Positions 1 to 39,400 of a stretch of 64,000 bases of DNA are shown one piece after another. A model generated the notes under the pieces. That model saw nothing but the letters and a program-made list of their open reading frames with translations, ran no database searches and was not told where the DNA came from. Positions within the stretch are counted from its first letter, which is position 1, and each line of letters starts with the position of its first letter. This DNA comes from Styela clava (lineage: Eukaryota): NCBI RefSeq assembly GCF_964204865.1, contig NC_135250.1, positions 14,694,001 through 14,758,000 on the forward strand. The letters are read 5' to 3'. Both the position numbers and the translations under genes were made by a program.

Positions 1-3000
1 ACTTCAATCATCACATGTTTGAATACCCGAGCTCACTTCTACTGATTTGTTATTATTTTACAATTTTTTTTATAAATTAACTGTCGTACTTGCTAAGTGT
101 CCACTAAGTGAAAATCTACAAAAAAAGCAGTGTTTAATAATGGACTACATTTTTAACCGAATCCAAAAATATTCCGTAACTTAGTCGACCCTTCCTCCGA
201 GGAGTTTTTGTTAAAACATCTTAATTAACTGTTAATCTTGATAGCAAACATGGGGGGCAGGGGGGGAGCTGACTGTGATGGTCGTATCGCTACCCAGTCT
301 ATACCGAATAACTGTGTGTTTTGTATATGATTTTTATTGATTCAATGCTTGTATTCTGGTTGACAAAATAAATCTCCCTCTCGTATTCAGTCATGTTTTT
401 TAACCTAGTTACGAGACCGGTATTGTACCATTATAGGTTGGAGATATTCATCTTTTTTGTATACCGGTACCGTACAACTTGTCCTGCCTATTGGCAAGAT
501 GGCCAACATTTTTGTTCGTAGGCCTATTTCAGTATTTACTAAATAATTTAGTTTTCACCTCTTGCAGCCTTGGTACGGTACCGGTAGTTTAAATAACGCG
601 TCCGCATGCCTTCAGTAAATGATTGCTAGCTGTACAGGTATAAATGCGTAAAACCAGTAAACAAACGTGATAGAAATGGTACGGGTTATAGATTGCTAAT
701 GTTAAACGCTTCCAGTACCGGACGGACACGGACCCAAAGCGACATTAGGGCCGCATTTGCAGCGCATATCCCACAGAGCACGGCGCGTTGGCAGAATCTC
801 ATGGTCTAATGAGAATGACGTCATCGGAAACACCGCGCTGATTAAAAGTTTAATGAACGATTATCAAAAATCTTGACCGTGTTTATCATGATAAAAATAT
901 CAAAAAAGATGTAAAAAATATTCTATCCTCAAAACTGCTCACGTATACAATGAAAGATATCTGGAAAATTACAAAAAATGCAAATTTCTGCTCTGGTGAT
1001 CACATTTCCCATAAGAGCTAATGTTAAAAAAAATTTTTACATCACTTTTATTTTTTGCGCGTAGGATGGGTTTTTAATGAATAAGGTCTATTCTCAGTAT
1101 CTACAATGTCTTATCCCCAAAATAGCTAATCAGTTTCAATTACATTATTTTTTAGGTTTAAAAATATATATTTCATCAATATAACACACACACACAACGT
1201 TCTGCACACCCACCGAAATAAGACTAAGATTAAATATAAAGAATAAAACAGCAATGCACCCAATATAAAAGCCAACCAAGGTGAATTGGACTCGGACTGT
1301 GAATATCACAAGTGCACGTCTTACTATACTGTAGTATAAATTCAAATTAATACGCGTTAAGCTAGAATCCGTGATGCAAAAACTCAAAAATACTTCGCCG
1401 AGGTTATTTTGCCTTTGCGACGTCACAATAGTCCTGTGGTAACAATGATTATTCATTATGACGAAACAATTGCACAAATGTGCATGTCATACTGAATCTC
1501 CATTTTTATGGGTTCGGAATTCTTAAAATAAAATCTGAGTTAACAGACAAGTGCGCAGCATTACATAAATACCTATTTTATAAAAAACTCAAAATCGCCA
1601 AAAATGACTTACGCAATTCGGTTATTAGCGTGACGACATACATGTACCAGCGCTGCGCGCATTAACACATATTCAATTCATTTATTATTTTCTCTCATTC
1701 TGCAGTCAAACCTATGTTAGCACAGATGCCATGTACTCGGCATATTTATAAATTACATAAAGAACCGCCGTTACGTAACGACGACCGTTTAGTTATGTAA
1801 GAATTGTAAAGCGGACATTTTCCGTATTTGCGACCACACAGATATGAACGACTTAAAACACGAAACAGGCCATGCGACATCTTACTTGAATCGACAGTAC
1901 ATCGATAAATCCGAGCATTAGTAGTTTGATAACAATTTTTTTGCAGAGAATATATTTCATTGAGGCGACCAATCAAGGATCCGAATCCAGAAGAGTAAGT
2001 CAGAATATTTGAACAAAAGTATAAATTTTTTTATTTCACTTATCTGACTCAATACGATAGCCTAATTAACAAATAGAAAGTAGAAACAGCTAGAATTGAG
2101 ATATTCCCATATTATAAGAGATGTGAAATTAGAACACAAAAATGTAATAAATTCGGGGGAAGGGACATACCATTGGCACATACAATCGCGTTTCGTCGCT
2201 GTCAGTAATTAAGTAACAAAGGAAAACTCGCAGATGAGCTTTCGAATGGGTAATGGTATATTTTAAACTTTTGACAGGTCCTGTGTGAGCTGACTGGACC
2301 TTTTCGAAACAAACTTTTACCTATCGATCTTAACACGTTGGGGAATAGATATTAATATTGATTTTTCCTTTATTAAGCTTGATGAATAAAATTGAAATTT
2401 TTGTCAATCAAAGTCGATTGTGTCCAACTGTGGAAAGCAAAATCAACATCTCCCTTCCCTTCCAATTATTAAAGTATTATGTAACGTAGTTATATAACCA
2501 AATTTTACGATGTTCGTCACGATTATATCACACAGCGTTAAGTTTAAATACGAAAGTGCGTTGCAAAGTTTTTTTGAAAATGTTCAAGATAAGAGTCGTT
2601 CTAACACCTTGCTATGAAAATGTAAACTGGCAAAATGGGGCGTAGGAATACATGTGTAATATGTAGCAGCGCGGTCCACTTTAGTATATATTCAACTAAT
2701 TTATTATTTGTTTATTATTTTCTCTCAATCTCCCAGTGTATCCGTACTTGAACGTCCACCGGGTAAGTATGTCTGGGACTTAATCCACGTAAATAGAATT
2801 ATTAAAAATTATATAACGTAGTTATATAACGTAGGTATATAATTTATATATATCAACTATACTCACGGTGATGCCACTGGATAGTTTCGCTTCGCAATGT
2901 TTGACAGTCTATTGCACAGCGTTGTTGCGTATAGGAAAGACTTAAAAGTAACGGTTTGAGGGTTTTATTGAAGCTTGTAAAATTATTGTTAGAGTCAGAT

Positions 3001-5265
3001 GGCAACAAAGCGATTTACCACAGAAAGGTTAAAGATAAATCCATCACAATTGCAGAAAGCGTGCATTTTCTTATTACAGAATCTCCAACTTTGCTTTTCT
3101 TCGTATTACAGTAACTGTTTGGATATATTTTTGTAGTTGTTGTGGTTTATCATGTTGTCATTGTTTTTCGGAAAAAATCGCTTTTCCTCGCAACTAACTA
3201 CGATCGCCATTTCAAATTATAAAGATGGATGAAATCGCTAGAAGACTATTACTTTTGTTTGTAATTTGGTCTTTCAAATTTCATCTCAGTCCCATGGGAC
3301 CAAAAATACCCTTCGAGACCATATTTGAACAGTTCCTCGTTTTGAAATGAAAGCTATCGGCGCTTGGCATATTTGTTACCTCAGCACTAGCTCACGTGAC
3401 ACGGCAGTGAGATAAAACTCTATTGCGTGTCGCGGTATGCATTTTCGCAGTATGCATATGTGAGATAGGTAGGAAATCGCAGTTTCATCTTTTATCGCCG
3501 AATTAATTCCTCATCGCATCGACTGGCCCACTGGTGAAACTGAAACCACACTTTTTCTGGCTTGTCAAACAAATATCGATTGGCGCAAAGTGGTCGTGTA
3601 AACAATGGGAAGCGGTTTCTGTCGTCTTATTCGTTTGGCTCAGAGATCTCAATAATTGTTCCTATTATGGTGACATTTTATTGGAAATTACCAAGTGTTT
3701 AAGAAGTTATGCAACAAAAAACATTCTTTACAAGTGCTGTAGACCCGTTAGGCATTACCCCTCTCGAAATTATCATGCAGGTGAGATGAGATCTTATTAC
3801 CAATCGAGCGATCTGAAAGTTTCAAAAAATTATCGAAAACTTCGGTTTTTATTTATGCTTTAATGACTATATAGGATCAACACAGCCCCGTTACGACAAC
3901 AGACGACCGCCAACAATCTGATGAGTGAACTCATGTTTTGGGCAGTCAATTTACGGTAATGATAGGACTTATCCTCGTGTAACCTCATTCTGTGACGTAT
4001 TGTGTTATGTAACAGAAAAGAACGAGAGAACGTAAAATCGAGAGAATATAGCGAATGTCGCGCAGGCGGGTGAGTGCGCATTTCATTATACTGGACAGTA
4101 AAGTATAAGAACTGTGATGGCAGATTGTCACTGATTTTACGAAATGAGTATTCATTAGCAAAGTAGATAATATATTTTAGCAATCAGAAAATACTGCTAA
4201 GTATATTTTATTCATATTTAAAATAATATGCAGTTCGTTCAGCAAGCTTTATCACTCTTTGTATATGACAAATAACAGAATAAGCGAGAGAAAGCAGTAA
4301 CACCTACATTGAAATGATCGACTTCAAATATGATCAAGTTTATTGAATATTATGAATAGACAAGTTTACCCGTTAGTAGCCAATTCAGGAAACCTCATTT
4401 ACTCATATGAGATCGAAAATATCAACTATACTCAGCCAAACAAACTTACGTAAGAGTATAAAATTACATAATTCTAGAGTCTAGACACGGAACACTTGAC
4501 GCTCCTTCTTTGCTCGAAACAGTGAAACGAATGAGTTTATTGTTACGTAATGGTAACTTTTTTGGTGATTTGTCGGCTTTAGAAAACAGCCTGTCACAAC
4601 GTAAGGATCGTCCTTTGAATGTAGGGCAGTAATTTTTTTTAAAGTTGTCCCTGTTCGTGACATCAGAAAAAATAATTTTCGGTATTAGATTGAAATTCGT
4701 CTCAATATCACGGTATCAATTCATGACTTCATGGAGACGCTTAATTTAAATAAGATACCGGTAGGTATAAAATCGAGATAGGGCATGAATTGAACATGAA
4801 CATTGAACATGATTATTGGTTTTTCTCACGATAAAGATATAATTGATATATGTACAAAATAGATATTATAAATCCGTAAACTTCAGTTTCTCAATAATTT
4901 ACATCTAAAAACGGACTAAAATAAAAGGAAAACTGTTATGGATTTTCATCAACAAAACTTCATATATTGGGATACGTTTATGCTGGTTACATTTCAAGTT
5001 TATCAATTAAACCGCAAACAAAATAAAATAAAAACGCCGTACGCGATTGCCTGGTGGGCCTACGCTTTGCAACCTTCATTGCGTTATTGCGCAGACAATA
5101 CCAATCCTCCATTTTTAATTTCCAGTTATATTAAATGATCTGTGTGTGCAATATATATCAGAGACTTTAACAAATTCGACGAAAGCTTTGTGTTACGGGA
5201 TTTTTTAATATTAATTCAACTTTGAAGATAAACCGGCATTGGGAGTATAAACTTTAAACGACGGA

Positions 5266-24848: not shown

Positions 24849-27800
24849 TTAAATATTATTTGAAGATTTCTCATCTTCGCTCTCTAGGCGTGACTGTTCA
24901 ATAACCCACATTCCTCCTCTGAGCGTGACCCCTAGACCGGATTTTCCCCCATTATTTAATGATTGAGTTTGCGATGTCCTATCTGCTTCCTCTTTTGCAA
25001 TTCTAATTTGCTCTTTGACTATTTCGGCTTCTTTTTTCCAAAGTTCCAAATTGGCATTGCAAAGATTCAGCAAATCTTCGCATTCTGGAAGTGCTTGAAC
25101 CAACGTTTCGTAGCAGCGCAGTGTAACATTCGTCGAAAATCCAACCTTAAAAATAAATAATCCGAGTTCGATTGTAAGTACAGTCGAGTTTTTACATTTG
25201 TTTCTTCGTTCCATTCTCAAAAAAGACACACCCATTGTACAACTTGAAATCAATGCGCTCACCTGCCCTTCAGGTATATCATACTGTAGATCTCGATCCA
25301 TCATTGGCAAGTAAGAAAATCCATGTTTCTTCCTCAAGTCTCCTTCAGCCCAAAACTCTTCGTATAAATCGTAAACTGTGGCTTTTGTAACTTCCCAACT
25401 TTTGGCATTTGAACACAAATCACACGCAGTCATCATCATGCTCGTGAGAGAGTGCCTAAACAAATAACCACATCTTTAACTTCTGTAATTTTACATCAAA
25501 TTTGTTAACAATAAAAGAAGTACCATGCACCTGTGAGTATGGTTCTTTATATCAAATTCGTCATTACTGAGCAGATCGTTAAGCACTCTCTGATTTGAGA
25601 AGAACAACGCCAAGTCGGTAGCTAATATGGCATCCATCATTAAACCGAGCAAAAAATCATAGGATTTTTGATCCATTCTGGAGAAAATTTGATGACCCTC
25701 TTGATTTAAAATTGTCAAAAGCATTTGATAGTGGTGTTGTTCCATTGTTGACGTCGGATAAAGCGCGGCCAGAGGGTGTTCAATCTTTTGTAAATACTGA
25801 TTGGAGAATGCTCTGTGATCCACATCATGAGCTATACAAGCAACTACTAATCCCACCATTTCTAATTTGGAAAATATTCCCTCCGTGCGTTTTAGAATAC
25901 AATACATGCAATGCGCAACGGTCACTGCATGTTTCCAATTGTGATATGGTTTGTTTCTGTAGTTTTTTCTTATTGCTAAAGTGAATCTTGCCAGATCTTC
26001 AGCTGGTATTGCAAAGTCCGGAGAACTAAGATCATTCACAATGTGTATGAAAAATCCCGGTAGTTCAATGTCGTAAGATGCGACTGAAAATTGAAACCTG
26101 AATGTACATAAAACAAAAATCTGAATCTTTATATGATATATAGATATATTCGTGTGACTTGACTTTAGTATAGTTTTGTTTTTTGCATTGCATTCACACC
26201 AAAGCATTTTGACAGTCTACACTCAGTGGTTCCCAACCTTTCTACCCTGGCGGACCGAAATGTACTCGCGGACCGGCAAAAATTAGAATGAGTGGAACAG
26301 AAAATAATAACATAATATTTGCATGGTGTCAGGCAATCACTATGCTTTTAAAAAAAAGATACACTTAAAAACGTTACACATGAAGAAAAACTATCAAACA
26401 ATGTGCCCGCCAAAAAATGAAATGGGGGAAACATAAAATAATAACATTCCATTATGCGTAAAAAAAGGCACACATCTCACATAAAAACATGTACATGCCA
26501 AATCATGTATAAATGCAATTAACTCCAGTGAGAATTTCACTACTGTTTCGTTTCCATTACAGCAGGGGTTCTCAACCTGGGGTTCGCGAACCCCCAGGGG
26601 TTCACGAGAAGATTTCCAGGGGTACTTGGATGGCAGTCGAGTTTTCGTGTGTTGCTATTTTTTAATATCCTTATTACTACCAGAGAAAAATGCGTGAAAA
26701 AATTGAAACTCAGCGTAGATTTTCCCTGATCTTGCGCTGTTGTGATTATGACTCAACAATGTGAATTCACGGCTTTGCAGGTAAACTGTGAAATCTCAAA
26801 AGACAGTGTGCTGCGAGTAGGGATGTTCGTATCCGAATACTAAACTATTCTAGAATGCTTCTGAAAAAACATTTCGAATATCGTTAAACTAAATTAACAG
26901 AACCAAATCAATACTGCACCAATTTTTTCCCAACATAGGTGAAGTTATTTTTTGGAATTGCTCATTTTCACCAGTGCTTTTTTTTTTTATATCAAATCAT
27001 GGTTGCAATGTAGGAATTTAAGAAGCTTCTACGTGCTTTTCAGTTAAAAAATTATGGAATTGAGATGACATGTGTTGCAACTTGCAAGCATTGTGGTATA
27101 TTTAAATTACTTAAATAAGCTTTACAAACAAGATAAAACAGTCAAATAGCTATACCAATCAGAGACAACCTAATTCAACCCACAAATTGCCGAACTGATA
27201 AGCAAGATTTGCGTTGGAATAAACAGCAAATAATATTTGCAAAAGCCGTTTAAATTGAAAATTGTTATTCGTAAATAAATCCGCTTGTTTTTCATATTTT
27301 GTTGCGACGTTGTAAACGTTTCCATAATCATTACAAACATCTTAAGAACATATCTGGACACAATTTATCCCATGTCTGTCTCGAATCTAGGCCAGATGCT
27401 CTATTAAAAGCGCAGAATAATTTCCTATGAAATTTTCAAAACACCGACTGCGATTTTCACAACACTAATTTTGTTATCAAAATCACCGATTGTTCAAAAT
27501 CGGAAATTCCCATGCAACGGTTACTAAAACGATCGTCGAGATTATATGACATTTTCAGCCTACAATAACTTTTATGTGGCGTAAAATATTTAATCCCGAC
27601 AACTACAGGAATTTTAAATGTCCTTCTATATTAATTTAATTGTGTTCAGTGTAACTTGTTGTTGCGTCGACTTGCGACAAAATAAAAGGTTTCTACTGTA
27701 ATATACCACGGCAATCTGTGGACATAATAACGCGAGGTGAAAATTACCATGGCAATCCGCGGACATAAAAGTGTGTGGTAACGTGCTTGATAATATCGTG

Positions 27801-30800
27801 TTTTGATTTGTATTTTCGCGAATTTGACAAATCTGAGCTGTTCTTGTAACTTTGACACGGCTCTTTCGCGTATCTATCGGCTCTAATGCTTTGAAGATAA
27901 CACCTTAGACAAAACACAGCGTCAGCAATAAAATTTCATAGAGTTAATTTTATTTCAAAAAGTTAATTGAAGATACTTTACATTAACTATTTTATATAAA
28001 AAGCTACGCTAGTTCCACGTCGGTAGTTTTAGAATGAATAAAAAGTGCCTCGCTCGCCCAATTGACAAAAAGAAATAAACAATTTTAATTTTATCTTTCT
28101 CGTAATACAAGACATTCGTCTTCCACTATTTGTGATTTCGCGAGAATAAAAGCCAAAAATAAAAATCATTACTGGATGAATAACACCGACGAAAACAATG
28201 GGCGATTCTAATAACAACATTAGCGCTGTAAATTGTCATCAATTGTGCAATTTCACTGACGATTCATGGTCTCGAGGAAGGATACTGGTACCCAGCAGAG
28301 CTAATGCGTTGGACCAGTGGTCGGCAACCTTTTTCAAGTGACGGACCGGTAAAGCTTGACCAAACTTTTGGCGGACCACCTTTATACAAACGAACTAAGC
28401 CTATGCAATAACTAATACGCATTAGGAAATTTATGTTGACAATATACTAAAAACGACGGTGATGCTATTTAAAGTGATGTCTGTATTTGTTTGATGGCCA
28501 TTAACTGTTCCCATATTCGAGATAGGGTCGACATTGACACTATAGTAACGTGTTTCTTACTTCCAGCCTATTTCGATATTTCGTTTTTGTAGTTATCAAT
28601 ATTGAAAACCAGGCCTCACATTAAGATTTCGGGAAAGTTAACAATGCCTGTATCGTTTTGTTGGGGAGATCTTAGTCGGACTGATGAGTGACATTCTTAT
28701 ACAAGCGTAGAGAAAACAATTTACCCAGCATTATTGCGACATACTGACATGGCAATTGTTTATGAAATAAGACATGTTGCTCAATAGTGTTATGCAGTGG
28801 TCGGCATTCGGCAAACTTCATGTACTTGCGGGCCAAATATAAACATTTCTGGTAGCGCGCGGGCCGCAATATTTCCGCCTTCGAACAATCTCTACCATAA
28901 TTAAACTTCAAATTATGGTGCATTCGCATTGCTATCCTTCTATTGCTGTGTTGAAAGTCTGTCCCAATGAGATGTGTATGTGGCGTTTTTTTTATTATCC
29001 AGTAATACATTGTTTTTTTGTACTTATTATCAATGTGAAAGATGATGTTTTTATGGCGACTCGTCGTCCAATTGATGATCTGACAAGCGAGTACGAAATT
29101 GAATCTAAGTGTAATGCATTTTAGATAAAGCTGTTCAAGACCATATGTTCTTCCGAACGTTCACATTACACGGGTTGCACTGTCGCACAGATGAGCTGTG
29201 GCGCAGTCCCGGGTCTCGGGGTCGAATTTTCGACGACTCGTTTCGTAACGAGTTTAACATTGAAACCCTTAACGACTGCGATGCTGACTGGGCATATCGA
29301 GCAAACCGGTTTTCGAATGCGCAAGAGAGAAAAATATTTTTCCATTCAAGCACTTTGAAATGCTCGATCCGCGTCGCTTCGTTTTCCAGACATTTTCAAA
29401 TTTTAAAAATCAAAATTAACTCGAACGACATTGGCTACTTGTTACATAAGAAGCGCCGTACAGCAGCACTTGTCACCACATAAATTCGTGTAGAGACAAT
29501 AATAAATTTGGGATTCATTGTTTTATTTATTAAATGTCGGGTCGTTCAAGGGCCGCAACAAATTAGCTCGCGGGCCGCATTTTTTCCGACCCCTGGGGTT
29601 GTGTTTGTCTGGTTTACTGTTGGGTGCTGTTTTTTAGTCGTAGGGTTTGTGGTTGGATTGTAGAAGTTTTATTAAGGCCTTGTCCGTTTTTGTGTCACCT
29701 CCCTGCGGACCGGCAGTAACCTTTCCGCGGACCGGTGATGGGCCGCGGCCCGGTGGTTGCCGACCACTGCGTTGGACGATTCAGTATATCCACCAACCGA
29801 CATACCGAAAAGATCGCCCGGCGACGTCGCAAGTTTTGCACATTTTAAATTACGATTAACCGAAATTGGAGAAAACTATTCGAATACAGCTCTAAACGAA
29901 AACGAAAGGGACATCCCTAGCTGCGAGTCTTGCAGAAAGTGATATGCTTATTGAAACTTGAGAGAGATTTTAAGAATTCATTAATTAGGTGGAGGACAAG
30001 GTCATTAACATCAACACCAAGATTTAATTTTGTTACAGCAGTCGGTCAATAAGTTGTTGTTGGAGCACATTGTTAGTCAATATATCACAACAACTTTGTT
30101 TGGTGTATGATTACCAGGGGTTCGCGTTGATTGTTTCGTGACTCGGGGGGTACTTAGCAGAAAAAAGGTTGAGAACCCCTGCATTACAGGATTGCAAACG
30201 AGGCATTAAAACAGGATTTGCAACACGTAGCTTTGCAGCGGCTCACAGTCAATTTATTTACTTCGTTTTAATTAAAGCTATAAGTAACTGGTTGAAAATT
30301 CGGACAACTGTTTGATTGCTCGATTATTCATTCTCAGCGATGGGTATTTTCGTTATCAAGAGAGCTCAAGAATAAATTGTGACAATGATTCGTTTATAAA
30401 TCTGGACTGTAAAGTAGAGGTTTCATCGGGTTCCTCATAGCAATCCTTCTGCAGTTGATCGACGCCCGAAATAAAATTAATTTATAGTACAATGATAAAG
30501 TCGTTGCTAACTTGGCACCAGGCTCATAGTCCTGCTGTGCATCACCCGGAAAATATATCAGCGGCCCCGGTTTTGTTACGCGTCTCGTGACTACCTGCAG
30601 GGTCGCAACAAGTTCATATCTTGTTGGGTGTCATGGTGCAGCTCTGGAATATTATACTGTTCTTGACAGTTTTCGGGTTTAAACAAAGAAATATTCATAA
30701 CCTTTTACTTGGATGGTAATTTTAATCAAGGAAAGCATGCAGAGCGGAAAAAGCACGAATGCTGATTTCCAAGTTTCTGAATCTTGCGAGATTTGACGGA

Positions 30801-33800
30801 GCGCTTTCGCGATGAATCGGAACCGAAAAAGCAAAAAGTGTTATTACTCTTCGCCAAGACGTCGCCGGGCCATTAATACCGCACTTATCAAACACCAATA
30901 TGACGGCGGAAGAGAAATTGCGTAATAAACCAACGTAACTTCGTCTTTTCAACGATTGAGACGGTAGAAAAACAACAAAATGAAATTTGTTGCAAAAAAG
31001 CTTCGCGTACCGGCACCGGTCCGCAGACCGGCGGTTGGGAACCACTGGACTACAGAATGTTATGTGTGGCTTTTCTTATGCTCAAGTGTTGAGGTGTGAA
31101 TATATTACAGCCTTAAAACAGGAGTTAGGGTCCTTCGTACGTAATGGTACCAAATGCGAACATCAAAATTTTCAACCTGAAACTGGTAGCATGGAAGACA
31201 AAAATATATATTCGAAGCTGATTTACCTTTCAAACTCGACTGGAATATCTGGCAAGCTTCCTTTGGTAATTTGTACGATTAATTCAGTAGCTTCTGTTTC
31301 TGGTGCTTTCATACTATTTCTGAACTGTTCTGATACTACCAAATGACTGTTATGCTCGCTTTCCAGTTTTGCATGAATCTAACCACAAATAGGCATTCGT
31401 CCGGTAATGTAGAATGTTTTTTTTTATTGATTGTGATTATATATATGATTTTATCAGTTTTCTTATTTTTAAAATATTTCAATCAATCACAACTTACCCG
31501 AGAATATCTCAGAGCCAAAGCACAAAATATCGCAAACATTGTGAAATTATCTTCATCGAGTTTTGTGAAGGATCCGCCAGTCCGTTTATTGATCATCTGA
31601 ACCACGCCGTATACTTCGCTTTCGCTCATAATGGGAAGGCACAATATGTTGTTTGTTGTGTAACCTAATACATAATGGCAATAAGGACAATAACAAGAAC
31701 TCTACCGCTATATTTACAATCACCCCCAAGTACGGTTCTAGTCGAACGCAAATCATGAAATTGTAATATCTAGTGTAGGCCTATTTGGTAGAACCTTTCA
31801 AGTATGCAAAAAATCTTGAACAGTACAGATAAATTTTGGTACTTTCGGGAATTATTGCCATCCTCATAATATCTATTTAGTTCACCTGTGACTTTATCAA
31901 CCTCCCTGTTGAATCTTGAATCGGCGTAGGCATCCTGAATATTCACGACTGTTTTCGTCGATGCCACATAACCCGCAATACCTTTCGACACATGGAATCT
32001 GAAGAAATTGAAAACCATTTTAGGAAACTTAGCCCTTACAAGAAGCGGATAGATTTTGGCATCCCGCTTCATATAAGCGGATTCAGTTCCTGTCAGAGAT
32101 CGCCTATATATTTCAGTTTGTTACGATATACTCGCTGCCGCGAACTTTGGTACACTGGAACTTTCTAGTCTTTATCTATGCTAGAGTCTAGTCTAGCACG
32201 TACAATGATTCATTTAAGCACTTTATTAACAGAAGATTAAAGGTTTTCAGACACAGTTATTCAACAACGCAACGCGATGGTTGATTTTCTTAGATTAGAT
32301 CCTGAGTCCGGTACCTTACGAATAAAACGACGGTGTTCTAGCATAATAATCATGTGTCAATAAAACGAAAATGAATTTAAAGCAATGGCCCACAAACATC
32401 ACTAAAAAGTTGAAGTTGTAAAAATTACACGGGCTAACATAAACTCACCGAATTTCGTTTCTTTTTTCAAATACTGATTTCCCATCAACCTCGTCACCAT
32501 TATCAAATAAATCGCTGTACAGTTCTTCATTGTTGCTGTCGTACAGAAATAACGTACAACGATCAGCTGAAACAAGCGTTTTTGCAAACCTGGAAATGAT
32601 GAATTATATAAAACAAAGAAGGGGCAGTAAAATAGTTAGATAAGTAATGTAAAAACACTTTACCGCATGATGTGCTCAATGATATTGTCAATATGTGTAA
32701 TGTCATCGAGATAAGTTCGTGAAACATCTAGCAAAAAATCATTCATCTCCGTTTGCTGTTTGAGACTGGAGCACACGGCTGATTTATGAATAGCAAGAGC
32801 ACTCCATTCTAATATACTCTGTAACATTAATAGCTTCACAGAATAAGTACGAAGCATGGGTGTTGTAAAGAGTTATAATGAGGGGGGCAGTAAATATTAT
32901 CTCAACTGATCATGGATACAAACTATTTAGCTTACCTATAGTATAACACAGGATAATGGATGCCTGAATAATGCGCACAATATGCTATGTTTTTTGCATT
33001 TCATTAATTAGTAAATGATTTGAATAAAGTATACCTGCACAATCTGTAGGTCGTTCTGAATATAACAACCATTATGCCAAGACCTGTAGAATTCGACAAC
33101 GGCTATCAAGTCATTGTTGGGAAGAATGACAGGTAAACAAAGAACGGCAATGCCGTCTGCGCTACAATCATCTGTTCCCATTTTTTTCGGAAAACGTGGA
33201 TCCATGTGGACGTCCTCGATACATATTGGCTTTTTAGTTAATGCCACATGCCCCGATACAGTCGTTTTTTTGGAGATGAGAAAACTGAAACACGACATAA
33301 CATGGCTAACATTGTGCGTACATAATTGATTGAATGCCAAAGAAAATTCGAGATATTCCATTTGAGAAATACCACGCGGCATCAGTACGAATTCAAACTT
33401 GTGTATGATGTGGTAATCCATTTCAGTATAGATCCACATTTGGCACGTTATTGAAAACGCAGTTAGCCCACTTATTACCCGGAAGGGCCTCCAAGGTTCT
33501 GTGGTTGTGAGTTAATTTCACTATCTCATTCAATGATCATTTACTAGAAATAACTGGTAGTCAGCTATTACTTGCTCCCGTATGCTAAACAGACTGCTAA
33601 CTGCGATAGATGCCGTAGTGGTCTGTAACAAAATCAGTCGACTCTATCGACTCTAGAGTAGACTCACAACATCATTATCTACCGGTAATTATTTTCGCCA
33701 AAGGGGACGTCCATACATCCGAAACATTGATTTGGTGCACCAACTGCAATCTTGAACCCGGACTACGAACTATAATACCAATTACCATTTGACAAGTATA

Positions 33801-36448: not shown

Positions 36449-39400
36449 ATGGCGTCCTTGACAAGGTAAGATCGTTGATCAACCTATATTTTAGGTGGTA
36501 AACTGTATTACCATTACTCTGCTTCAGTTCAGAACCTTCAGTTCAGAACCGTTCAGAAAGTTCAGACCGTACACCGCCACCCAGGCACCGGTGCAGCTGT
36601 AAGACAAGTTTTTTGAACTCCAACATAATAAATTACAAAAATGACAACACAAGACAAACATGTCTGCATGTAGAATTGAAATTTCTGAATAGGGCACAGT
36701 TCTACAATTCCAGGAATAGCCACCACAATGAAGTACATCGGGTCTCTTGAAGCACACGTAATACGGCCCTCCAAAGTATAAGTATGGTTGTGCAGACAAT
36801 CATCCGAAATGGAGCAAGCTATTTCTCTCGTTTTCTCGTCGAAATGATACCAATAAAAGAAAGATCGCTGACGTCAGTGAGTTCATTATAGTCGGCACAG
36901 ATGCCATTTCCGCAGAGGAGTCGCCACCCCTGTAGCTCCAAAGGCCCACCACATGACTCAAAACAACAAACTGCAAGGAAACGCAACTGGATTCCTTGGA
37001 AAAAATAATCTAATTTACCAAAGGGAGAAAAATTTACCGTAAAATTTGAGAATTTTTATTAAAAGCACACAATTTTGGGGTCTAGTGAAGTAAACGCCGT
37101 GGCTGTCCAAATACTGAAATATCGGGTCTCATGTAGTTTCTTACCTACCATACTTCTAGTGGGCGTAGTATGACATTTTTTTCACGTATCAATCCTAACA
37201 CCATCCAAAAATTACATCACAATGATGTAATAGAGCCCTTCAAATTATACGAACTGCCATCCAAGACGCGCAAACGAGCACCCGAAATCGAACAGTTATT
37301 TCTCTCGTTTTCTCGTCGCAACGATTCCAATAGAAGAGAGAGACCGATAACGTCAGTCAGTTCTTTATCGCCAGCACCAATGCCATTTCAGTCGATCGTG
37401 CGTATATTTGGCAAGCTCTATGACGTGATTCTGATGTCGTAGCGATTTAATTTTTGGATGGCGTAATCAGATGGGGGTTAGGATTGACATATCAAAAAAT
37501 TGTTATGCTACGCCCACCAAAAGTACGTTAGGTACGAAACTACACGAGACCCGAAATAACACCTAACAAAAATGTCAAATGAAAGCTGAAACTGCTCAAA
37601 TAACGCCAAACAAAAATGTGATGTGAAATTGTAATGTAAATAACGTAAAAGTCTGTACGGCGGCGCAGAAAGAAATTCTTGAAACACGCGTTTAGTTCAA
37701 ATCAAGCCCACTAAATTTTCAACTAAGCAGGTATGTTCCATGTCGTTTGAGGTATTGTGTTCGTGCCAGATAGACCCTTATTTTTTTTTTCAAAATGAAA
37801 ATTTGGGTTGTATTTTTACATCGCATTTTTGTTTGGTGTTATTTAAGCACAGCTTTTATTTTCACACCACATTTGTGTTTGGCGCAATTTATGCAGTTAC
37901 GGCGTTTACTTCACGAGACCCCAATTTTGGTCATGTGACAGCCTTCACGTCACGATTGATTTAAATTATTACCGAGACAAGCTTGATTCAGGAATGTTTG
38001 GTTCTATTGAATCAAATCTCGGGGCATCTTGGAATCCGAGAACTGTGCCATACTGAACATTGATGACTCATGAAACTGATGGTTTGGAAAGCTATAATAA
38101 CTAACCCTCTTATAGGAATTGTTGAATAATTGCGAAAAAGCCTTAAAACTTGTATTATCTCTTAACAACTTCACCACATTACCATAAATAAGAAGCCCAA
38201 AATTAACAGTAAAATGAAGGTGATTGTTTTTATTAGATCTGGATACACTGATAAAATCATGATCAACGATTTGGTAAACGATGAATCCCAACATGTTACT
38301 GTGTGAAGAGCCAATATTGGCAGAGCTGATGAGACTTAAAAACTATTAACAAACCACAAACCCGCCCTACCACCCTCAGATCCCTTCCACAAAACCACAA
38401 CAAAGTTTGCTCAATAACTTTCCTTTTAAAATTTTATAATCTAGGGCAGGGGTGTGCAACCTTTTTCGCAAGCGGGCTAAATATCAAAAACTGGGTAAAA
38501 CCGCGGGCGCACCTTCATTTAACATAGGCTTTCTATTGGTTGCAGGCACAAAATACTGTATTTTTGGTATTGATCTCATGGCGTCATCGTAGGGGTTCTT
38601 GCAGAAAACGCATAAATTTCTTAAAACTGTAATTCAAATATATTTTCACACACAATCTAAACGAATTCAGTGAAAAATTTGCTGCTGGATTATTTTCCAG
38701 ACTACTTTTATCCAAATTTGCTTAAATGGAAGTGCTAGCATTTCGATATGACGCTCATTTTAGAAAAAAATATGTAACCGAAAAGTGCCTTATTTGAAGC
38801 CATGACTTTTTTCAAATGTGGAAAGTTATCTTAGTTGAGATGTTTTTTTGGTATAATACGCCAAGATTCGTTTCCAAATACTTTGCTGTCAAATCTTATT
38901 CTAGATTGGATTTAAACAAAATCAACTGATAGGCTGAAACCAAAACTCATTTAGCTTTTGTATCTCTTAATATTAAATTTTTTCAAACTGCTTTCCAGTT
39001 GCCTAATCTTCAGTTGCCCGTTATCACATCATTAGCGTCTGCTCCGCAAATTCCTTTCAATTGTTCGCTGCTCGGCCAGTGACAGCTTTGTGAATCGCAT
39101 TGTTTGCTTCGCTGAAAGGGCATTGTAACGTCATAGGCATAGATAATAAATTGGACTCGAATATAAGCTTTGCAATGCAAAAGGAACCAGATCAAACTAA
39201 ATTAAAAACTAGTTTAGTTGGCTACTACACCATTCAAAATTGGCTCTTCTCCGTGGGCCGCAAAATTTTTTTTCGCGGGCCGCACTTTGCATACCCTTGA
39301 TTTTGCCCCTAGCGTGATTAATCCCTATTTTTGCTACTCGCTAGTGTCAGTGTATATTTACTCAATATAATATTTTATTATTTGCAGTATTTTGCCGGCA

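What the first reader, a model, noticed from the sequence alone, without database searches (positions are those of the whole stretch)
26224..31047. Five-level nest of hAT transposons filling one PDE10A intron
Five distinct TIR-bounded elements are strictly concentric: 26224-31047 > 26563-30181 > 26818-29919 > 28315-29769 > 28795-29595. Levels 2-4 have perfect 8-bp TSDs (CATTACAG, GCTGCGAG, CGTTGGAC) and levels 1 and 5 have eroded ones. All five have hAT hallmarks (8-bp TSD, CAG/TAG termini) but different TIR families. Removing them shrinks the 5.1-kb intron to about 0.3 kb, similar to the other PDE10A introns. Deep nesting is familiar for plant LTR retrotransposons. A five-deep, single-superfamily DNA-transposon stack in an otherwise compact gene suggests hAT-into-hAT targeting or cargo accumulation (inference).
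Basis: partly seen in the sequence, partly recalled or inferred. Interest (0 to 1): 0.78.

Follow-up and report, generated by a model that had tools for sequence, protein, structure and literature searches.

The report
Nested dead hAT transposons in intron
One intron of a sea-squirt PDE10A-like gene is swollen from about 0.3 kb to 5.1 kb by short, non-coding hAT-type transposons that landed one inside another, which is what ordinary random insertion is expected to produce in a genome this full of such elements.

Summary
The concentric structure is real. All five TIR pairs and the three perfect 8-bp TSDs sit at the stated coordinates.

Other genomic copies show the uninterrupted target, present once:
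- level-3 site in level-2 family copies, 15 of 19
- level-2 site in level-1 family copies, 10 of 19
- level-4 site in level-3 relatives, 5 of 19

Level 5 is not a local event. In 25 of 25 other copies examined it already lies inside level 4. Levels 4+5 are therefore one 1,455-bp composite family, and the locus records four insertions, not five. Another first-reader note on this stretch (s1-819964) proposed the same.

Four of the five levels share one TIR type; only level 3 differs.

Nothing supports hAT-into-hAT targeting:
- A strictly concentric order has probability 0.09-0.15, given four hits in this intron.
- Uniform insertion predicts 50-800 such stacks genome-wide.
- A suspected hot spot failed: 0 of 8 fetched flanks were level-2-like.

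Reads could not test the assembly; no record spans the nest. Verdict: an ordinary nested-transposon stack of low interest.

The parts
26098..31226 (-). Intron of the PDE10A-like gene (GT at 31226-31225, AG at 26099-26098 on the minus strand); 5,129 bp, 297 bp without the nest
25494..26097 (-). Downstream exon that starts the PDE catalytic domain. The lower bound is the end of the stop-free stretch, not a mapped splice site.
   Evidence: PDEase_I at 1.1e-39. PDE10A chains at 1.7e-62.
31227..31367 (-). Upstream exon (reads ...[16 protein letters not shown]-); its 5' bound is approximate
   Evidence: Frame translation. The phase fits the acceptor at 26098.
26224..26562 (+). L1 left arm. The element is about 1,197 bp of its own sequence, with TIR CAGTGGTTCCCAACC and subterminal GCGGACCGG motifs.
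   Evidence: Family copies. Two of the three copies with both ends have perfect 8-bp TSDs.
30182..31047 (+). L1 right arm. Its first 8 nt (30182-30189) are the right copy of the L2 TSD.
26563..26817 (+). L2 left arm. This is a 509-bp MITE with TIR CAGGGGTTCTCAACCT. Its TSD CATTACAG lies at 26555-26562 and 30182-30189.
   Evidence: Ten of 19 L1-family copies carry the target once. Of 17 L2 copies with both ends, 8 have 8/8 TSDs and 5 have 7/8.
29920..30181 (+). L2 right arm
26818..28314 (+). L3 left arm. The element is about 1,639 bp of its own sequence, with TIR TAGGGATGT. Its TSD GCTGCGAG lies at 26810-26817 and 29920-29927.
   Evidence: Fifteen of 19 L2-family copies carry GCTGCGAG once. The relative L014 has a perfect 8-bp TSD.
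29770..29919 (+). L3 right arm
28315..29769 (+). L4+L5 composite element, 1,455 bp, with TIR CAGTGGTCGGCAACC. Its TSD CGTTGGAC lies at 28307-28314 and 29770-29777.
   Evidence: Nine of 9 intact family copies have perfect 8-bp TSDs. Five of 19 L3 relatives carry the target once.
28795..29595 (+). L5 part. It entered the L4 progenitor before that family amplified. The window copy has a private 7-nt duplication in its 5' terminus.
   Evidence: among the aligned family copies the flanks read GTGTTATG and GTGTTGTG (7/8), and the TIR agrees at 12 of 14 positions by eye; the same terminus also occurs outside the composite context.

Best explanation
Four successive cut-and-paste insertions of non-autonomous hAT-type elements built this stack, each landing in the element that arrived before it.

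1. L1 (about 1.2 kb) entered a roughly 0.3-kb intron.
2. L2 (a 0.5-kb MITE) entered L1.
3. L3 (about 1.6 kb, with a different, TAGGGATG-type TIR) entered L2.
4. A 1,455-bp composite (L4, already carrying L5) entered L3.

The L5-in-L4 nesting happened earlier and elsewhere, and that composite then spread as its own family.

The concentric order needs no targeting. Once L1 was in place, most of the tolerated target space in the intron was transposon. The genome carries so many DNA transposons that stacks this deep are expected.

Shown: the boundaries, the TSDs, the empty sites and the composite nature of L4+L5.
Inferred: the order of events (from nesting), the transposase source, and neutrality.
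For: Structure:
- TIRs and TSDs are at the stated coordinates.
- Base-level empty sites carry a single copy of the target in 15/19, 10/19 and 5/19 family copies (HSP layout).
- Each family makes 8-bp TSDs elsewhere: L4 9/9; L2 8/17 perfect plus 5/17 at 7/8, and L1 2/3; L3 relative 1/1.
- L5 lies inside L4 in 25/25 copies examined.

Age ordering fits the nesting:
- L1 copies are 83-88% identical to the window's right arm, and its TSD is eroded.
- L2 copies are 83-91% identical to the left arm.
- L4 copies are 89-94% identical.

Transposase supply: 150 scored hits over the Pfam cut-off for the hAT dimerisation domain, out of 1,855 candidates, with open frames up to 903 aa.

Chance:
- The conditional probability of strict concentricity is 0.09-0.15.
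- Uniform insertion predicts 50-800 depth-4 chains genome-wide.
- I counted 4-5 foreign insertions in 27.8 kb of family-copy arms that were not used as search queries. They include a 9-bp-TSD MITE and a tRNA-like SINE, so the insertions are not only hAT.

Against: - No read or contig spans the nest, so the assembly is not independently confirmed. Only the L1 right junction is bridged, by X2 record 16 and X3 record 24. The left junction has 27 letters inside L1, fewer than the 31 required.
- A genome-wide count of hAT-in-hAT nesting was not possible, so the expectation rests on a simple model and a small sample.
- L3's nearest relatives are only 78-81% identical. Its age relative to L2 is therefore not shown by divergence.
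- The species name, and with it the published repeat figures, come from other agents' notes. I did not verify them.
- Two L2-family copies carry an 8-bp tandem duplication exactly at the L3 site. It resembles a hAT excision footprint and remains unexplained.
Confidence: 0.9

Rival explanations
1. hAT elements insert preferentially into resident hAT elements, through a sequence hot spot or through transposase or chromatin affinity. The stack would then reflect targeting rather than chance plus tolerance.
For: - Three of roughly five elements with this TIR type in the 64-kb window lie in the nest.
- Two of 25 L4-family copies elsewhere carry hAT-like insertions.
- A footprint-like 8-bp duplication sits at the L3 site in two L2 copies.
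- The TIR-plus-target motifs recur: 4 hits for the left junction and 13 for the right, self included, against 0 for the tool's control.
Against: - Eight flanks at seven of those recurrent places were fetched. None of the 8 is L2-like; they are other TAGGGATGT-type MITEs in unrelated DNA.
- No other L2::L3 composite turned up: 0 of 39 other scored matches span the junction.
- Insertions into family copies also include a 9-bp-TSD MITE and a SINE-like element.
- The nest's L2 and L4 targets (CATTACAG, CGTTGGAC) fit their families' nTnTAnAn consensus poorly.
- Chance models already account for the stack.
Confidence: 0.07
2. The whole nest is a composite that accumulates cargo and moves as a unit.
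For: L4+L5 did exactly this: 25 of 25 copies examined are composite.
Against: - Nineteen of 19 L2 copies lack L3.
- L1 copies lack L2.
- L3 relatives lack L4.
- No second near-identical L3 arm exists; the next best is 78% identical.
- No other match spans the L2|L3 junction.
Confidence: 0.01
3. The nest is an assembly artefact: repeat copies joined wrongly.
For: No read or contig spans the region. The available runs are short contigs and Illumina Hi-C reads.
Against: - Misjoins happen inside shared repeat sequence. They do not create three complete elements, each flanked by an exact 8-bp duplication of the host element's own sequence.
- Contigs covering the low-copy L3 body show few differences from the window in two samples: X2 records 11-13 have 2, 1 and 0 other letters, and X3 records 18 and 20 have 0 (X3 record 19 has 5). 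Paralogues are at most 81% identical.
- The L1 right junction is bridged in two runs. These runs may come from the individual that was assembled.
Confidence: 0.02

Closest known systems
Nested MITEs in maize and rice (Jiang and Wessler 2001, Plant Cell 13:2553). I saw it only as cited and paraphrased in PMC3695323; the paper itself is not held.
   Same: Small non-autonomous DNA transposons lie inside one another. As paraphrased in PMC3695323, nested and clustered insertion may act as a 'safe haven' where further integrations are tolerated.
   Different: Those elements are plant Tourist and Stowaway types with TA or TTA TSDs. Here the host is an ascidian, the elements are hAT-type with 8-bp TSDs, and there are four successive local events in one short intron.
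Carrot DcSto Stowaway MITEs with nested insertions (PMC3695323; passages read)
   Same: One MITE family carries complete copies of another MITE, and the TSDs define each event.
   Different: Those nests are one level deep and were detected by PCR. They belong to a different superfamily.
Transposon-in-transposon chronology analyses, such as the TinT tool applied to Hydra repeats (PMC12220107; passages read)
   Same: Nesting is treated as a routine by-product of successive insertions and is used to order families in time.
   Different: That is a genome-wide statistic. This is a single locus.
Styela clava genome description (PMC7540406; section 3.1.3 read)
   Same: It reports DNA transposons as the largest repeat class, at 23.81% of the genome. 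[quoted passage not shown] That is the pattern seen here.
   Different: Section 3.1.3, the only results section I read in full, gives no locus-level nests and names no TE families below class level; the find passages shown did not include the paper's 'hat' hits. Its supplements were not seen. That the window comes from this species is taken from other agents' notes, not from my own test.

Membership tests
hAT superfamily (non-autonomous members) | 8-bp target site duplication | tested here: met
   In the window: L2, L3 and L4 are 8/8, L5 is 6/8, and L1 is 0/8 in register. In family copies: L4 9/9; L2 8/17 perfect and 5/17 at 7/8, L1 2/3; L3 relative 1/1.
hAT superfamily (non-autonomous members) | Short TIRs that begin with CAG or TAG. 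This criterion is recalled from general knowledge of the superfamily, not taken from a call. | tested here: met
   The TIRs are 9-16 nt and start with CAG (L1, L2, L4, L5) or TAG (L3).
hAT superfamily (non-autonomous members) | Target preference of the nTnnnnAn type (recalled) | tested here: met
   The TSDs of L4- and L2-family copies read nTnTAnAn, often TCTAGA. The nest's own targets fit this only in part.
hAT superfamily (non-autonomous members) | Mobilised by a hAT transposase whose autonomous element has matching termini | not tested
   No level holds a transposase-sized frame: the longest stop-free stretch inside the nest is 162 aa, and no frame was scanned against Pfam. L3 relatives hold no frame over 141 aa. 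The genome has at least 150 hAT dimerisation-domain hits.
MITE | Small (under about 800 bp), non-coding, high copy number, with TIRs and TSDs | tested here: met
   L2 only: 509 bp, copies of 433-529 bp, and 464 first-look candidates. L1, L3 and L4+L5 are 1.2-1.6 kb, so they are better called non-autonomous elements.
PDE10A orthologue (host gene) | GAF domains followed by a PDEase_I catalytic domain that is closest to PDE10A | tested here: met
   PDEase_I in two exons and GAF in one. PDE10A chains score 1.7e-62 against 6.4e-39 for PDE5. Exons were searched separately, and no phylogeny was made.

The most novel reading that the evidence does not exclude
Resident hAT elements in this genome may be favoured landing sites for other hAT elements. 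Nest-born composites such as L4+L5 would then be a regular route by which new mobile non-autonomous families arise. In that case the footprint-like duplication at the L3 site in two L2 copies would be the trace of repeated use of one site.
Probability: 0.07. Interest if true: 0.45.

Novelty: new member of a known kind. Interest (0 to 1): 0.15.

Why it matters
It matters little beyond annotation. The locus is a clean, base-resolved example of how transposon pile-up inflates a single intron in an otherwise compact gene. It also shows a nested pair (L4+L5) becoming a mobile family in its own right. It gives a relative order of activity for four hAT-type families in this genome. It gives no evidence for a new insertion mechanism.

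Tried and rejected
1. Reads. Only short contigs and Illumina Hi-C reads were on offer. Other copies of the repeats dominate the depth, and nothing spans the nest. Neither the assembly nor presence/absence in other individuals could be tested. The 'skips' (for example 26814 to 29930) look like other, empty family copies, not an empty allele.

2. Repeat content of the window by own-genome search. All 39 scored candidates bar one belonged to a single ~850-bp family, so the approach was dropped. A BLAST of the window against my own loci found only 2,564 bp of repeats outside the nest, which is a lower bound.

3. Transposase in L3 relatives. No frame exceeds 141 aa. The module 27342-28274 is shared with a larger non-coding repeat.

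4. Hot-spot idea. It was raised by recurring junction motifs and a footprint-like duplication. It was rejected because 0 of 8 fetched flanks are L2-like.

5. Solo L5. No solo copy was seen directly. The L5-type terminus preceded by a base other than G has 144 exact hits, against 87 with G. About 65 of the 144 lie in one array on contig C3.

6. An L5-less L4 was not looked for, because that would have needed a joined sequence.

7. Jiang and Wessler 2001 is not held.

8. I did not check whether this nest or these families are in print beyond. Supplements were not seen, and the repeat tables of PMC7540406 may bear on family names.
Full report
**The observation.**
- L2, L3 and L4 have perfect 8-bp duplications: CATTACAG, GCTGCGAG and CGTTGGAC.
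- L5 has 6/8.
- L1 has 0/8 in register. By eye, it has 6/8 if the left copy is shifted by one base.
- One such TIR-plus-TSD structure is expected about 2e-7 times by chance in 5.5 kb.

**The host gene.**
- The region lies in a minus-strand gene with GAF and PDEase_I domains.
- Its catalytic exon matches PDE10A structures at 1.7e-62, against 6.4e-39 for PDE5.
- Exons were searched one at a time, and the joined model was left out.
- The intron runs 26098-31226 (GT..AG, 5,129 bp). Without the nest and one TSD copy it would be 297 bp.
- From the stop-free map, neighbouring exons lie a few hundred bases apart or less, so 'compact gene' is fair. I did not map every intron.

**Each layer is a member of a dispersed family.** Own-genome searches gave these first-look candidate counts, which are not copy numbers:
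- L5 part: 743
- L3 left arm: 1,776
- L2 left arm: 464
- L1 right arm: 1,142

**Empty sites.**
- In the 19 other L2-family loci fetched, the two arms are contiguous. In 15 of the 19, the two matches overlap by exactly 8 nt and the copy reads the target GCTGCGAG, or a one-letter variant of it, once.
- In 10 of 19 L1-family loci, the L2 site is uninterrupted and holds the 8-nt target once, as CAATACAG in 8 copies and TAATACAG in 2.
- In 5 of 19 loci found with the L3 arm, the L4 site is uninterrupted and reads CGTCGGAC once. The other 14 share only an internal module.

**TSDs of family copies elsewhere.**
- L4: 9 of 9 intact copies have perfect 8-bp TSDs, with targets of the form nTnTAnAn.
- L2: 8 of 17 are perfect and 5 of 17 are 7/8.
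- L1: 2 of 3 are perfect.
- The L3 relative L014 is perfect.

These are the hallmarks of hAT-type cut-and-paste insertion. They show three successive insertions into elements that were already in place.

**Level 5 is different.**
- When the L5 matches were extended, all 11 first loci continued into L4 sequence on both sides. So did all 14 further loci. That is 25 of 25 examined, out of 39 non-self matches; 14 could not be fetched.
- Across the 11 aligned family copies, the L5 flanks read GTGTTATG and GTGTTGTG, a 7/8 match. The chance of 7/8 or better is 3.8e-4.
- The L5 termini pair at 12 of 14 positions, by eye.
- L5 carries GCGGGCC-type subterminal repeats, whereas the L4 arms carry GCGGACCGG.
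- The L5-type terminus also occurs 144 times with a base other than the composite's G in front, against 87 times with G. About 65 of the 144 lie in one array on contig C3.
- So L5 most likely was an independent element that entered an L4 progenitor. The composite then amplified to at least the 25 copies seen, at 89-94% identity to the window copy.
- The locus therefore records four events.
- The first-reader note s1-819964 proposed the same from the TSD 'age inversion', and my test agrees.

**The TIR families.** L1, L2 and L4 agree at 11-13 of 15 TIR positions, and L5 is close to L4. Only L3 (TAGGGATGT) is distinct. L1 and L4 also share the GCGGACCGG subterminal motif. 'Different TIR families' is therefore only partly right.

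**Is the stack more than chance?**
- If each later element landed uniformly within the intron of the time, strict nesting has probability 0.80 x 0.25 x 0.45 = 0.09. If only transposon sequence is tolerated, it is 0.15.
- Genome-wide, uniform insertion of 90,000-180,000 DNA-transposon copies into 377 Mb predicts 50-800 time-ordered four-deep chains.
- That input uses the published 23.81% DNA-transposon share of Styela clava (PMC7540406, section 3.1.3). The species label comes only from other agents' notes.
- An estimate that does not depend on the label: in 27.8 kb of family-copy arms not used as queries, I counted 4-5 foreign insertions, or 0.14-0.18 per kb.
- Those insertions include a 203-bp MITE with a 9-bp TSD, a tRNA-like 369-bp element, a 263-bp MITE and a hAT-like element in L008. 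A second hAT-like element interrupts L081, but inside the query part, so it is not in the count.
- At that rate, about 0.2-0.4% of L1-sized elements would carry such a chain.
- Other notes of this scan describe further nests in this genome (s1-813324, s1-815937, s1-826124). They are leads that I did not check.

**A lead towards targeting, and its failure.**
- One L2 copy (L047) carries an 8-bp tandem duplication exactly at the L3 site. The same 21-mer occurs at one more place.
- Motifs joining the L2 target to the L3-type terminus recur: 4 hits on the left and 13 on the right, self included, against 0 for the tool's control.
- A query spanning the junction found no other L2::L3 composite: 0 of 39 other scored matches cross it.
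- The flanks at seven of those places, in eight small pieces, are not L2-like in 8 of 8 cases.
- They belong to other, apparently abundant TAGGGATGT-type MITEs in unrelated DNA, including introns of other genes.
- The recurrence is thus explained by the sheer number of such termini.
- The footprint-like duplication remains a minor unexplained item.

**Assembly.**
- No record spans the nest.
- The L1 right junction is bridged by two contigs: X2 record 16 with 56 letters inside L1, and X3 record 24 with 39.
- The left junction has only 27 letters inside, below the tool's criterion of 31.
- Contigs on the low-copy L3 body show few differences from the window in two samples: X2 records 11-13 have 2, 1 and 0 other letters, and X3 records 18 and 20 have 0 (X3 record 19 has 5).
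- These runs may derive from the assembled individual.
- The stronger argument is internal. A misjoin would not produce complete elements flanked by exact duplications of the host element's own 8 nt, three times over.

**Comparison and verdict.**
- Nested non-autonomous DNA transposons, and the 'safe haven' reading of them, are in print for plants. I saw Jiang and Wessler 2001 only as cited in PMC3695323.
- Nesting is routinely used to order repeat families in time, for example in PMC12220107.
- My four literature searches returned nothing about this locus or these families.
- This is a tidy new instance of a known kind. It has one mildly instructive feature, a nest that became a mobile composite family.
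- I see no sign of a new mechanism.

Noticed in passing
L047 (C8:5990724-5990744) and C19:14018896-14018916: Two L2-family copies carry an 8-bp tandem duplication (GCTGCAAG then CCTGCAAG) exactly at the site where L3 sits in the window copy. It resembles a hAT excision footprint, or it could be replication slippage. The identical 21-mer at both places suggests one event that was later copied.
   Followed up: partly
L014-L018 (five loci on contigs C4, C1, C3 and C16): Five L3-relative copies share the same 8-nt flank (ACATTAGT) at their 3' end. They therefore probably sit inside a host repeat that was amplified or duplicated together with them. This would be another co-amplified nest.
   Followed up: no
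window 27342-28274; L016-L032: An internal ~930-bp module of L3 is shared at about 76-81% identity with a larger, multi-copy, non-coding repeat. The flanks of that repeat are conserved among its own copies. L3 may be a deletion derivative or a chimera of it.
   Followed up: partly
G000 C3:432,809-1,060,363: About 65 exact copies of the L5-type terminus lie on one strand, mostly 3-10 kb apart. They point to a large tandem or segmental array whose unit contains such an element.
   Followed up: no
L055 (C3:15834915-15838715), about positions 2309-2678 and 2845-3108: One L1-family copy carries two insertions. A 369-bp tRNA-like (SINE-like) insertion lies within a few bases of the site that L2 occupies in the window. 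A 263-bp MITE with roughly 50-nt TIRs lies in its left arm.
   Followed up: partly
window 38437-39303: This is an abundant ~850-bp repeat. Thirty-eight of the 39 scored candidates hit it at 81-90% identity, out of 5,898 first-look candidates for the 11-kb query. It lies upstream of the PDE gene.
   Followed up: no
window 30722-30947; L057, L060, L062 and L064-L071: The L1 family has an internal unit of about 226 bp that is repeated a variable number of times in tandem in other copies (up to four in L068).
   Followed up: no
run X1 (organism A): A run labelled as a different organism holds pieces of the L4 family at 95% likeness or more. It also holds a 255-letter flank of an L1-family copy whose start is identical to the flank consensus in the Hi-C run of organism B. 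It is probably DNA of the same or a very close species under another label.
   Followed up: no
window 28801-28814: The window's L5 5' terminus carries a private 7-nt duplication (TCGGCAT) that is absent from the 10 other aligned copies covering this site. This is why most own-genome matches start at query position 14.
   Followed up: yes
L087 (C10:12606560-12606830); L092 (C1:6266670-6266860): TAGGGATGT-type MITEs of about 1.6 kb and 0.8 kb sit in what look like introns just after coding exons of other genes, with mirrored 8-bp TSDs (GCTGCAAG and GTTGCAAG). The sizes are inferred from paired motif hits only.
   Followed up: partly
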